Assembly (NCBI RefSeq): GCF_033153115.1
Contig: NW_026889779.1
Location: forward strand, 15,438,001 to 15,502,000
DNA length: 64,000 nt
DNA from: Saccostrea echinata
Lineage: Eukaryota
Direction: 5' to 3'
Part shown: piece after piece, positions 19,159 to 22,100 of the stretch
Position numbering within the stretch: the first letter of the stretch is position 1
How the letters are laid out: each line of letters begins with the position of its first letter
Made by a program: the position numbers and the translations under genes
The notes under the pieces: model-generated
Seen by the model: only the letters and a program-made list of their open reading frames with translations
What the model was told of the DNA's origin: nothing
Databases searched by the model: none

Positions 19159-22100
19159 CTGTAACAAAAAGGAAAATTCTTATATTGTATCTTCATTTTA
19201 ATTTCAAACAGTACTTTTTTAAATCATCAAAATCTAGCTCAACATATGAGGATATCTCTTCAAAGATTCATAATTGAACAAAAATTTACACATTAAATGC
19301 TTTGCTCTATTGCAAAACACATTGACAAATATTTATAAATCTCTGCTTATTACTACATGTACCTCATATTTTTCACCTTTAAGGTATATCCATACATGTA
19401 CCATAGAATTATAAGTATTCACTACAGATATACATGTATATGTATACAGTACATACAACTTTTAAAATTCAGCTTTCCTCAGAGGAGTATACAATATTCA
19501 TTTAAAATCTTAGAAGCCTTCACTTAAAATTTTTCAGAAAAAAAAAACACTGTAAAGAAATTAACTAAAATTTCCCAAAACACTGTCAGCCCTGTTGATA
19601 GATTAGAAGTCAGGGGCTAGCAGGCTGACTGGACTACATGCACTACAACTTGTAATACTAAATGTCACCAAATTACTGAAAAATCTGAAGGACTTTCTTT
19701 CCATATCAACACAACATACACCATAAAGACCTATATGCATTTATTTACTGGTACATGCATAGATCTGCTGCTCACTAAAAAAGCTATATGCGGTATATGC
19801 ATAATTTTGCCCCAACGTCAAATTTTGAACATTTCCTGAAATCTGCTAAATTGTATATATTGTATGAAAAATCTAAGTTAACAAAAAATATAATTTCAAA
19901 GTAGGTTATTGACTATTTTTGGTTCAATGATGTCACAAACTATTTGGATTTTGTATTATTTTTCAGAAAGAGAAAAATGTAGTCCTAATGGGTAAAATAC
20001 ACTTCTAGCTGTTGTGTACTGTTGTTTACTGTTGTGAGCACTTGCAAAAATTTCTGTTGGATGGATAAGGAATTTTGGCGAGCGATCATGAACGCTAACT
20101 CTGTTGAACAGGCCTCAGAAATAACAGAAAATACATGTATGCAGACTTGGAAGAAGAGTATTATTTTTTGTTTTGATGATGTAATAAAATATATTTTGCA
20201 TAATTTTTAAATTAGAGGATAAAAAGCACAAAAGCCTCTATATATTTTTAATCTGCAAAATTCAGAGGACAAAATCATGCCCAGCCTCCAAAGTCATATG
20301 CTTTTTTCACTAAAATCATTTTACACCTAATATTAAATGCTCTTTAAATAGTGCTTTAAAGGGTTAGATTTTCTTTTTTTCTCAGTTCAAGACTTATATG
20401 TGAACATTCAGCCATGAAGTTGTTGGAAATAAATTATGTTATGCCATTTTTTAAAAGTTTCCTTATTATCTCCCTTTGGAAAAGAGCATGAAACTTGAGA
20501 GTTTGGTTGAAATAAGATCCAAGGATTCTAAATAATTTGAAAGTGATTGGTCACTAAAATGGATATGAACAAATACTCTGTATTTTTAGGTAATTAAGTT
20601 GATCTATGAAAAAATAAAGAAAAAGATTTTCACTAAGTAAGAAAAAATTACCATCATATCAAAAAAGCCATATTGAAATAAAAAAAATTGATCAAGATGG
20701 CAGATTTATGAAAATATAATCTCCATTTTCATCTGTTGGATGAAGCTTGATAAAAAAGAAATCCAGAAAGTTTCTTTTTGGTCCTCCATCAAAGGGGTTA
20801 AAAAGCTTCCCATCTTTATCTTTCATGTGGGCATATCTTTTGTACTTCAGCTGTTCGTTTGTTGTTAAATTTTTAATGATTGAATAAACCTGAAAATAAG
20901 AGAAAAAAGATTAATGAATGAATCAAGTAATTTTAAGCAGTTTTCCACTGCTAAGATACATATTGTGCACGTTATCATGTTCAGTTGTGATGTAATGTTA
21001 TGCATAGAAAGTAATGGTTTTTCATGACTTACATATGTATAAAATTTCATAGTTTAAACTCTGGGTAATGTTGGCCAAAATTAGGCACATAAAACTGCTG
21101 CACTATTTACAGAGTTTATCATGTACCAATATGTTTCTATACAAAACTTAAACATCAGAAATTTTTAAGTCTTTGAATAAATCTGAAAATAAAACGTAAA
21201 ATCTCGCTTACCAGGTAACCACATAGGTAGGAGGCCACGCAGAGGTAAAACAGCATGAGGCAGAGGAAAAACAGGTAGACCATGTTAAGCTCCTCATACT
21301 GGGTCAGAGCGTAATAACTGAAGAAGGTGCTTAAATAGCCATTCATGGTAACGCACCAAACAAAGCCTACAAATGAAACTCTGAAAAACACAAGAAGGAT
21401 TCTTATATAAATCAGCCTCCGATCTGCATCCTGCTGAACAGTAAACAATCTCCTGATTTAAGTTTCATTGACAAAAACATTTAGGAATTCTTTTTTGGAT
21501 TTGTAGTATGTCTGAAAAGATAAACTGAATACTTCTGAAAAAGATATACCAGGTAATTCTACAGTGCAAATAAAAACACTGCCTTAAATATGAAATCCAC
21601 CAGGAGATTATTTTTACAAAGATAAAAAAAAATGTGGTTGATTGGAATCCCCTCTACTGATTCCAATCCCCACCCACACACTTGTGTTCAGCTGTGATGC
21701 GTCATGAGGACCCTTGACATTGATGGTCAGTTCTGAGCAGTCTTACCATGAGGACAGTCACCGCTGTGACCGCTACGGTGGCAACACCTGCCTCGACTGC
21801 TCCTATAACTACAATCCAATCCCAGCCAAATTCAGAGAGAAGATGGTAGCAGAAGAAGTCCGTAAAAAGAACATTGCCAAACATGGTGAAGACAAACATG
21901 AAGAACCAGGGCCTACAACAGAAGAAACTGTCGATCAGGCTCAAGTGGACACTTACAGGAGTGTGGACAGTGAACTGTTGATCAAGCACGCCACTGATCA
22001 GATTCCATTTTTTTAAAATTAAAAGTGTCATGACAAAAAAGAAATTTTTTCATAAAACTAAAACATTAAATACAAATACATGCATGTACATGAAAGGGTT

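What the first reader, a model, noticed from the sequence alone, without database searches (positions are those of the whole stretch)
20978..21709. Candidate competing RNA duplexes (docking site plus two selectors) controlling the DHHC exon choice
Seen, in transcript orientation: S1, 5'-CCUCAUGACGCAUCACAGCUGAACA (21709-21685, 37 nt after the exon A donor), is complementary to D, 5'-UGUUCAGCAGGAUGCAGAUCGGAGG (21440-21416), with helices of 8, 5, 3 and 4 bp. D is immediately followed by a branch-point-like CUGAU (A at 21412) of exon B. A 14/16-identical copy of the S1 core, S2 5'-ACAUCACAACUGAACA (20993-20978), lies downstream of exon B. Inference: S1:D shortens the effective distance from donor A to branch point B to roughly 40 nt, sterically preventing A-B joining, while D:S2 would loop exon B out. 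Established: competing docking/selector pairings govern mutually exclusive splicing in arthropod genes such as Dscam1. A weaker pairing (21733-21720 with 21985-21972) could loop out exon A.
Basis: partly seen in the sequence, partly recalled or inferred. Interest (0 to 1): 0.75.

Follow-up and report, generated by a model that had tools for sequence, protein, structure and literature searches.

The report
Competing intron RNA stems at alternative exons
Two alternative exons of an ankyrin-DHHC palmitoyltransferase gene lie among intron segments that can pair in two mutually exclusive ways, a layout already known to control exon choice in other animals but untested here.

Summary
The sequence observation holds. 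S1:D has 22-24 bp (-25 to -28 kcal/mol) and closes the 366-nt A-B intron. Only 4 of 1000 shuffled introns contain a duplex as good. One cDNA contig switches strand exactly at the base of this stem.

D:S2 is no better than chance (219 of 300 shuffles as good, pair probability 0.00). Looping out exon B would give A-T1, which no contig shows. Contigs of four runs (three organism labels) show only DHHC-exon→A→T2 and DHHC-exon→B→T1→T2. The choice is therefore exon A against the pair B+T1.

The real competitor for S1 is new. S1 is part of an 81-nt element R, which starts at the exon A donor. R pairs with L, 1.7 kb upstream, over 60 bp (-60 kcal/mol; 0 of 100 shuffles, z -7.3). L:R would loop out exon A. 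S1:D abuts the exon B branch point. The two share 21688-21712 and cannot coexist, as with R1/R3/R4 of human ATE1.

R, D and the H2 arms are conserved in translated intron ORFs of relatives. No relative's DNA could be fetched, so covariation and function remain untested.

The parts
23939..24115 (-). 3' part of the constitutive DHHC-motif exon; it ends at 23939 and its donor GU is 23938-23937
   Evidence: Pfam DHHC PF01529, E 1.5e-18, on ORF 23929-24180. Joints 23938/21911 and 23939/21380 lead to exons A and B. Sequence.
23465..23544 (-). L: upstream-intron arm complementary to R, 394-473 nt after the DHHC-exon donor and 1.55 kb before exon A
   Evidence: L:R has 60 bp at -60.1 kcal/mol. The strong part 23520-23465 has 44 bp at -53.9. 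0 of 100 shuffled intron pairs reach the real value, z -7.3. Single copy in the genome. No RNA contig depth over it.
21747..21912 (-). Exon A (166 nt, phase 1), encoding a two-helix membrane segment after the DHHC motif
   Evidence: Joined to the DHHC exon (X1, X2, X4) and to T2 (all 4 runs). Translation.
21668..21748 (-).
   Evidence: Pairs with L or, through 21685-21712, with D. Relatives' intron translations are conserved here: 14 of 19 residues in P0005.
21632..21680 (-). H1: local hairpin in the A-B intron
   Evidence: 15 bp, -18.7 kcal/mol. Pair probability 0.99.
21590..21614 (-). H2 5' arm
   Evidence: H2 has 23 bp at -23.4, probability 0.99. 'K.SP.G' is kept in P0005.
21442..21469 (-). 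H2 3' arm, directly next to D
   Evidence: 'IRRLF' is identical in P0002.
21413..21441 (-). D (reader: 21440-21416): downstream partner of S1; its 3' end overlaps the first letters of the branch-point-like CUGAU (21415-21411)
   Evidence: S1:D has 24 bp at -27.8. 4 of 1000 shuffles are as good. Probability 0.97 when L is absent. The strand-switch joint 21419/21705 in contig X1 record 5 falls here. The P0002 translation matches in 11 of 14 residues.
21212..21380 (-). Exon B (169 nt, phase 1), positional counterpart of exon A
   Evidence: Joined to the DHHC exon (X2, X4) and to T1 (all 4 runs). A and B align weakly at the same positions (5/16, E 0.097).
20978..20993 (-). S2: 14/16 copy of the S1 core in the B-T1 intron; no supported pairing role
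   Evidence: D:S2 is at chance level.
20652..20889 (-). T1: 238-nt internal exon carrying a TTNE...NPF tail and a stop at 20694-20692; its donor GU is 20651-20650
   Evidence: Joints 21210/20887 (all 4 runs) and 20652/19158 (X2, X4). Translation, sequence.
18973..19159 (-). T2: coding part of the last exon (second TxxE...NPF tail, stop 18975-18973). It is coding after exon A and 3' UTR after T1
   Evidence: Joint 21747/19158 in all 4 runs. Sequence and ORF.

Best explanation
The gene, on the minus strand, encodes an ankyrin-repeat DHHC palmitoyltransferase of the ZDHHC13/17 type. It makes two mRNA forms: DHHC-exon→A→T2, and DHHC-exon→B→T1→T2. In the second form T1 carries the stop codon, 40 nt before its junction with T2.

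I propose that an intronic three-part RNA switch helps keep the two forms exclusive. The 81-nt element R starts at the exon A donor and contains S1. R can pair with L, 1.7 kb upstream. That pairing puts exon A and its 5' splice site in a loop, leaves D free and favours DHHC-exon→B. Alternatively, the S1 part of R can pair with D. With hairpins H1 and H2 this folds the A-B intron into a compact three-way junction. The S1:D stem abuts the exon B branch point and leaves about 40 nt of single strand between the exon A donor and that branch point. Exon A therefore cannot join exon B.

The short B-T1 intron is removed independently, so T2 is then the only acceptor left for exon A.

Shown: the isoforms, the complementarities and their statistics, their mutual exclusivity, and in-vitro fold-back at S1:D.
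Inferred: that the pairings form in vivo, their effect on splicing, and the order of events.
For: Isoforms:
- Joints A→T2 and B→T1 occur in 4 of 4 runs. DHHC→A occurs in 3 of 4, DHHC→B in 2 of 4 and T1→T2 in 2 of 4.
- No A→B, A→T1 or B→T2 joint is listed.
- Relatives' proteins show A spliced to T2 (P0009) and B spliced to T1 (P0003, P0013, P0015).

S1:D:
- -27.8 kcal/mol, 24 bp; 4 of 1000 shuffles as good; intron z -2.83.
- Pair probability 0.97 in the context exon A to the B acceptor.
- Contig X1 record 5 switches strand at 21705/21419 with a 4-nt overlap, exactly at the base of the stem. This is the signature of hairpin-primed cDNA. The same contig has B already spliced to T1.

L:R:
- 44 bp at -53.9 and 60 bp at -60 kcal/mol; 0 of 100 shuffles as good, z -7.3.
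- Best pair between the two introns also with 30-nt windows (1 of 100).
- Single copy in the genome.

Competition:
- With L present (2231-nt fold) the MFE has 14 of 14 L:S1 pairs and 0 of 17 S1:D pairs. Probabilities are 0.98 against 0.0001.

Conservation:
- In translated intron ORFs of relatives, R matches in 14 of 19 residues, against 43 of 55 for exon A.
- The H2 3' arm plus D matches in 11 of 14 residues, against 5 of 12 for the tract between D and exon B.

Precedent:
- In ATE1, disrupting the pairing that encloses one exon raises use of that exon. Disrupting the pairing next to the other exon raises use of that one (PMC7797038, section 15 read).
Against: - There are no functional or in-vivo structure data.
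- All reads were assembled contigs, which drop rare forms. Absence of A-B, A-T1 and B-T2 is therefore weak, and A-B would be a frameshifted probable NMD target anyway.
- Contig depths suggest the A form is at least as common as the B form. At equilibrium, however, L:R is predicted to win outright whenever L is present. Thermodynamics alone therefore does not explain the ratio.
- No DNA from a relative could be obtained, so covariation is untested. Conservation is seen only through translations of ORFs from unnamed species, and I cannot show that the S1-bearing and D-bearing ORFs come from one species.
- In P0005 the last four S1 letters that pair with D are changed.
- In one more distant relative (P0008) the intron after exon A shows no likeness.
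- L conservation is unknown (blank).
- L and D are not alike in sequence, unlike R1 and R4 of ATE1.
- Stems that bring a 5' splice site near a branch point are known to help splicing in yeast (passage in review PMC7404189).
Confidence: 0.45

Rival explanations
1. D is a docking site for which two selectors compete. S1:D blocks A-B joining, and D:S2 loops exon B out.
For: S1:D is real. S2 is a 14/16 copy of the S1 core, seen in 2 of 2000 shuffles when S1 is fixed. The 15-mer shared by S1 and S2 occurs only 4 times in the 923-Mb genome, and two of those are S1 and S2.
Against: D:S2 is -12.3 to -14.6 kcal/mol. 219 of 300 shuffled B-T1 introns offer D an equal or better partner. Its ensemble pair probability is 0.00. 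Looping out B alone predicts A→T1, which none of the 4 runs shows. The search for S2 conservation was blank, which says little.
Confidence: 0.1
2. The stems are real RNA or DNA features but do not set the exon choice. Exclusivity comes from frameshift plus nonsense-mediated decay of A+B transcripts and from splice-site competition. L:R and S1:D are then relics of an inverted duplication, or they serve another end, such as compacting the intron to aid its removal or favouring back-splicing of exon A.
For: A plus B adds 335 nt, which is not a multiple of three. Double inclusion is therefore out of frame and would be lost from contigs. Inverted repeats flanking an exon are the usual setting for circular RNAs (recalled). 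Stems that shorten the distance from 5' splice site to branch point help splicing in yeast (passage in PMC7404189). The A form is common although L:R is predicted to dominate.
Against: NMD does not explain why the in-frame hybrids A-T1 and B-T2 are absent from contigs. No back-splice ('goes back') joint of exon A is listed. R, D and the H2 arms are about as conserved as the exons in relatives' translations, while neighbouring intron is not. D sits directly on the exon B branch point, and R sits on the exon A donor.
Confidence: 0.3
3. Chance complementarity or a repeat-family artefact such as transposon terminal repeats.
For: S1 contains the palindromes CAGCUG and CAUG, which multiply possible partners. 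Introns here are AT-rich and hold 268 gapless inverted pairs in 5.3 kb.
Against: Shuffle tests give 4 of 1000 (S1:D) and 0 of 100 (L:R). Both regions are single copy in the 923-Mb genome. There is no Rfam family at gathering score; the two chance-level hits have E 0.55 and 0.78. The strand-switch contig falls exactly at the stem base.
Confidence: 0.05

Closest known systems
Human/mammalian ATE1 exons 7a/7b: competing pairings R1:R3 and R3:R4 (PMC7797038; abstract and sections 14-15 read)
   Same: Two tandem alternative exons. One element between them (R3, here S1/R) pairs with an element upstream of the first exon, enclosing that exon (R1:R3, here L:R). Alternatively it pairs with an element right before the second exon (R3:R4, here S1:D on the exon B branch point). 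The two pairings overlap and exclude each other.
   Different: In ATE1, R1 and R4 lie immediately upstream of both exons and resemble each other. Here L lies 1.55 kb upstream of exon A and shows no likeness to D. R here also covers the exon A donor. The second alternative is an exon pair (B+T1) with its own stop codon. ATE1 is proven by compensatory mutants and antisense oligos; nothing is proven here.
Docking-site/selector control of arthropod exon clusters (Dscam1 exon 6, 14-3-3 zeta, Mhc, srp) and the duplication model of Ivanov & Pervouchine (PMC6071210; abstract and discussion read)
   Same: Intronic complementary elements compete, so that one exon of a tandemly duplicated set is used. 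A short copy of one arm (S2, like S1) lies after the second exon, as expected if intron arms were duplicated with the exon.
   Different: There is no single docking site paired by a selector in front of each exon. The S2 pairing is at chance level. There are only two alternatives, and the organism is not an arthropod.
Steric exclusion in alpha-tropomyosin exons 2/3, where the branch point is too close to the upstream donor (recalled, not read), and distant branch points in OGDH exons 4a/4b (PMC7969005; abstract seen in a search listing only)
   Same: The outcome proposed for S1:D is a donor and a branch point brought within about 40 nt, so that the two alternative exons cannot be joined.
   Different: In the linear sequence the distance here is 334 nt. 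Closeness would arise only through the S1:D stem. The stem may instead act by covering the region next to the branch point.

Membership tests
Competing-RNA-structure control of mutually exclusive exons (ATE1 / docking-selector type) | Tandem, related exons of like length and phase, of which one and only one is used | tested here: met
   A is 166 nt and B 169 nt, in the same phase, with a weak positional likeness. Contigs of 4 runs join the DHHC exon to A or to B and never A to B. Caveat: these are contigs only, and B always comes with T1.
Competing-RNA-structure control of mutually exclusive exons (ATE1 / docking-selector type) | One intronic element complementary to two or more others through overlapping letters | tested here: met
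S1/R pairs with L (-60 kcal/mol; 0 of 100 shuffles) and with D (-27.8; 4 of 1000). The two share 21688-21712.
Competing-RNA-structure control of mutually exclusive exons (ATE1 / docking-selector type) | The competing arms resemble each other (duplicated selectors) | tested here: not met
   L and D show no clear direct likeness. S1 and S2 do resemble each other (14/16), but S2 has no supported partner.
Competing-RNA-structure control of mutually exclusive exons (ATE1 / docking-selector type) | Conservation and compensatory changes of the arms across species | tested here: inconclusive
   Only translations of intron ORFs from unnamed relatives were available. R matches in 14 of 19 residues and H2-arm plus D in 11 of 14. 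Two pairs (21696-21430 and 21688-21437) have a change on one side whose partner falls on a silent codon position. No DNA was available: closed, blank.
Competing-RNA-structure control of mutually exclusive exons (ATE1 / docking-selector type) | Disruptive and compensatory mutations or antisense oligos change exon choice | not testable with these tools
   Needs minigenes or in-vivo work.
Steric-hindrance mutually exclusive splicing (alpha-tropomyosin type) | The branch point of the downstream exon lies too close, in the primary sequence, to the upstream exon's donor | tested here: not met
   From donor G21746 to the branch-point-like A21412 is 334 nt. Only the folded S1:D form gives about 40 nt.
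NMD-enforced mutually exclusive splicing | Double inclusion or double skipping shifts the frame | tested here: met
   166 + 169 = 335 nt, and each exon alone is 1 mod 3. Decay itself was not tested, and the in-frame hybrids A-T1 and B-T2 are not covered by this rule.
ZDHHC13/17 (HIP14)-type palmitoyltransferase (host gene) | N-terminal ankyrin repeats plus a DHHC cysteine-rich domain and a TTxE-type tail | tested here: met
   Pfam Ank_2 at 1.4e-23 and DHHC at 1.5e-18 on separate exons. TTNE and TANE tails are seen in T1 and T2.

The most novel reading that the evidence does not exclude
A conserved three-element RNA switch (L / R with S1 / D) couples two choices in one step. Exon A goes with tail T2. 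Exon B goes with the stop-carrying exon T1. This swaps both the last two membrane helices and the C-terminal TTxE/NPF tail of an ankyrin-DHHC palmitoyltransferase. As far as my searches show, it would be the first competing-RNA-structure exon switch described in a mollusc-like (lophotrochozoan) genome, and one in which one alternative is a two-exon module.
Probability: 0.35. Interest if true: 0.7.

Novelty: new member of a known kind. Interest (0 to 1): 0.55.

Why it matters
If the switch works as proposed, RNA-structure-based exon exclusion would extend beyond arthropods and vertebrates. It would also show how one intronic element can coordinate two distant splicing decisions, giving A with T2 and B with T1.

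The enzyme would then come in two forms that differ in the membrane helices lining the acyl-chain pocket region and in the C-terminal tail. That makes a testable case for isoform-specific palmitoylation.

The elements are short and well defined. Minigene, antisense and probing tests are therefore straightforward.

Tried and rejected
- a null built on RNAduplex of the two intron halves. It was flawed, because unlimited interior loops made real and shuffled sequences alike. It was replaced by seed-and-window scans.
- A local hairpin between the exon A 3' end/5' splice site and S1 (-22.2 kcal/mol), as a possible donor mask. Rejected: pair probability 0.00.
- A stem that would loop out B+T1 by pairing the A-B intron with the T1-T2 intron. 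The best is -19.4, and 71 of 100 shuffles are as good.
- Other intron pairs, all: A-B with B-T1 (38 of 100 shuffles as good), upstream with B-T1 (57 of 100), B-T1 with T1-T2 (10 of 100).
- A transposon or repeat origin. Both regions are single copy, and exons A and B have no paralogue in the genome.
- A known RNA gene in the intron. Rfam gave only E 0.55 and 0.78, far under gathering scores.
- Direct likeness of L and D. None was found.
- Conservation of L and S2 through ORF searches. Both were blank, which says little.
- Earlier notes by words: nothing.
- Supplements of papers were not opened. ATE1 supplementary figures may bear on how close the parallel is.
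Full report
**What is at the site.** The window carries, on its minus strand, a gene with ankyrin repeats (Pfam Ank_2, E 1.4e-23) and a DHHC domain (PF01529, E 1.5e-18) on separate exons. This is a ZDHHC13/17-type palmitoyltransferase.

After the DHHC exon (ends 23939, donor GU 23938-23937) come four exons:
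- Exon A: 21912-21747, 166 nt.
- Exon B: 21380-21212, 169 nt.
- T1: 20889-20652.
- T2: from 19159, stop at 18975-18973.

A and B have the same phase, encode 55 and 56 residues and align weakly at the same positions (5/16, E 0.097). T1 and T2 both encode a T-x-N-E...NPF tail. Neither A nor B has a paralogue elsewhere in the 923-Mb genome.

**Check of the observation.**
- S1 starts 37 nt after the exon A donor.
- D is followed by CUGAU, with its A at 21412, 31 nt before exon B.
- S2 matches 14 of 16 letters of the S1 core.

Extended slightly, it folds at -27.8 with 24 bp. The best duplex anywhere in a dinucleotide-shuffled A-B intron equals the real one in 4 of 1000 shuffles.

The whole 366-nt intron folds at -96.4 kcal/mol, against -81.5 +/- 5.3 for shuffles (z -2.83; 1 of 100 as good). 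S1:D is the closing stem around two further helices. These are H1 (21680-21632, 15 bp) and H2 (21614-21590 with 21469-21442, 23 bp).

In the ensemble from exon A to the exon B acceptor, the mean pair probabilities are 0.97 for S1:D, 0.99 for H1 and 0.99 for H2. The region is single copy. No Rfam family reaches its threshold.

**What the RNA shows.** One run search and one laying of four runs were allowed. The runs were X1 and X4 (organism A), X2 (organism B) and X10 (organism C, about 90% alike in the exons). All are assembled contigs, and their spliced joints show that they come from RNA. The listed joints are:
- DHHC exon→A, in X1, X2 and X4.
- DHHC exon→B, in X2 and X4.
- A→T2, in all four runs.
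- B→T1, in all four runs.
- T1 (donor after 20652)→T2, in X2 and X4.

No A→B, A→T1 or B→T2 joint is listed. The real alternatives are therefore A→T2 and B→T1→T2. T1 is an internal 238-nt exon whose stop (20694-20692) lies 40 nt before its junction with T2.

Proteins of relatives agree. P0009 reads A spliced to T2. P0003, P0013 and P0015 read B spliced to T1. Contigs drop rare forms, so absence is weak evidence. A+B would be out of frame (335 nt) and probably degraded.

**A direct trace of the S1:D stem.** Contig X1 record 5 (421 nt, depth 3.6) has three parts:
- It runs along the plus strand from 21529 to 21705.
- It then switches to the minus strand at 21419 and runs down to 21210.
- It continues into T1 across the B-T1 junction.

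The switch has a 4-nt overlap and falls within 4 nt of the base of S1:D on both sides. I read this as fold-back (hairpin-primed) synthesis on a cDNA. It shows two things. The two segments pair in vitro, and a transcript existed in which B-T1 was already spliced while the intron upstream of B was still present. It does not show pairing in the cell.

**The second selector fails.** D:S2 is -12.3 to -14.6 kcal/mol. In 219 of 300 shuffled B-T1 introns D finds an equal or better partner. Its pair probability is 0.00. Looping out B alone would also bring exon A next to T1, a form that no contig shows.

S2's likeness to S1 is unusual if S1 is fixed beforehand (2 of 2000 shuffles). It is not unusual for any 16-mer of the intron (23 of 150). 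It may be a relic of an intron arm duplicated with the exon, as in the model of Ivanov and Pervouchine (PMC6071210, discussion read).

I scanned S1 against the whole 5.5-kb region. This gave two outliers: D (-27.8) and a site at 23520-23489 in the upstream intron (-27.3). All windows averaged -8.7, sd 3.9.

The upstream pairing extends a long way:
- 23520-23465 pairs with 21748-21688 over 44 bp (-53.9 kcal/mol).
- It includes a perfect 13-bp helix, 23490-23478 with 21729-21717.
- It reaches the exon A 5' splice site.
- With weaker extensions it has 60 bp, 23544-23465 (L) with 21748-21668 (R), at -60.1 kcal/mol.

The best 60-nt duplex between the shuffled upstream and A-B introns averages -32.1 (sd 2.4, minimum -41.6). 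None of 100 reaches the real -49.5 (z -7.3). L is single copy and has no RNA contig depth over it.

L:R encloses exon A in a 1.7-kb loop. L:R and S1:D share 21688-21712, so they cannot coexist. In a 2231-nt fold that includes L, the MFE has 14 of 14 L:S1 pairs and 0 of 17 S1:D pairs. The probabilities are 0.98 and 0.0001. Without L, S1:D is at 0.97.

**Conservation, as far as it could be seen.** No DNA of relatives was therefore available.

Some predicted proteins in the public collection are ORFs that read from an exon into the intron. Aligned to the window by tblastn, these translations give the following:
- P0005 (exon A 43 of 55 identical) matches R in 14 of 19 residues. It matches the rest of the intron in 12 of 31 residues, and these cluster on the 5' arms of H1 and H2.
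- P0002 (exon B 46 of 56 identical) matches the H2 3' arm plus D in 11 of 14 residues, but the tract between D and exon B in only 5 of 12.
- P0040 reads through S1 with changes.
- P0008, a more distant relative, shows no likeness after exon A.

Two S1:D pairs have a sure change on one side. The first is G→A at the position of 21430 in P0002. The second is A→U at the position of 21688 in P0040 and P0005. In both cases the partner falls on a silent codon position, so compensation cannot be read. I also cannot show that these ORFs come from one species. Searches with the ORFs over L and over S2 found nothing, which says little.

**How it most likely works.** R is the shared strand.
- If R pairs with L, exon A and its donor sit in a loop and D is free. 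The DHHC-exon donor then uses the exon B acceptor, giving B→T1→T2.
- If the upstream intron is removed first, or D wins locally, S1:D with H1 and H2 compacts the A-B intron. The stem ends on the first two letters of the branch-point motif and covers the 27 nt upstream of it. About 40 nt of single strand then remain between the exon A donor and the branch point. A cannot join B.
- T1's acceptor is used by B independently, as contig X1 record 5 shows. T2 is then the acceptor left for A.

This is the logic shown experimentally for ATE1. There, breaking R1:R3 raises exon 7a, breaking R3:R4 raises exon 7b, and blocking R3 gives double inclusion (PMC7797038, section 15 read).

The inferred steps are pairing in vivo, the effect on each splice site and the order of events. 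I put 0.45 on the model as a whole, about 0.9 on the isoform structure and about 0.9 on the two complementarities being non-random.

**Evidence against, and rivals.**
- The equilibrium prediction that L:R always wins does not fit the common A form. Kinetics or proteins must matter.
- L and D are unlike each other, in contrast to ATE1 R1 and R4.
- Stems that shorten the distance from 5' splice site to branch point help splicing in yeast (passage in PMC7404189).
- Frameshift plus NMD could remove A+B without any structure. That does not explain the missing in-frame hybrids, however.
- Inverted repeats around an exon could instead favour a circular RNA, but no back-splice joint is listed.

**Novelty.** Papers holding the docking/selector terms never mention molluscs: all 15 listed show 0 occurrences. 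Three papers combine Crassostrea, mutually exclusive splicing and RNA secondary structure. By title and abstract they concern myosin gene structures, coq-2 and lncRNAs, not such a switch. A search for ZDHHC17 or palmitoyltransferase with mutually exclusive exons listed 12 of 277 papers, none holding the phrase 'mutually exclusive exons'.

I rate this a new member of a known kind (ATE1-like competing structures). Its unusual feature is that one alternative is a two-exon module. I did not identify the organism.

Noticed in passing
window 20652-20889 (minus strand): T1, noted earlier in the scan as a hidden terminal exon, is not transcript-terminal in the contigs. It has a donor (GU 20651-20650) joined to T2 in runs X2 and X4. 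Its stop lies 40 nt before that junction, so T2's coding part becomes 3' UTR in the B form.
   Followed up: yes
window 21940-22010 with 21408-21472 (minus strand): The 70 nt just upstream of exon A (its likely branch-point region) are complementary to the H2 3' arm plus D plus the exon B branch point (48 bp with many loops, -40.0 kcal/mol). This is borderline against the shuffle null (mean -32.1, minimum -41.6).
   Followed up: partly
window 19785-20138 and 22263-22970: Many high-depth contigs with loose ends from all four runs lie on these intronic stretches. This suggests dispersed repeats that are transcribed elsewhere.
   Followed up: no
protein P0015 (relative; T1 region): In one relative's transcript the T1 stop is read as W, and the frame runs on for 31 residues. 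P0003 and P0013 stop there.
   Followed up: no
window 20988-21012 with 19692-19716: A 25-nt, 76% complementary pair links the segment just 5' of S2 with the T1-T2 intron and would enclose T1. Its energy is about -16.5 kcal/mol. It was not tested against chance on its own.
   Followed up: partly
window 21747-21755 and 21703-21711: The 9-mer GUCCUCAUG that ends exon A is repeated at the start of S1, 44 nt downstream. Its meaning is unknown.
   Followed up: no
window 46152-46292 and 56495-56629: Two N stretches.
   Followed up: no
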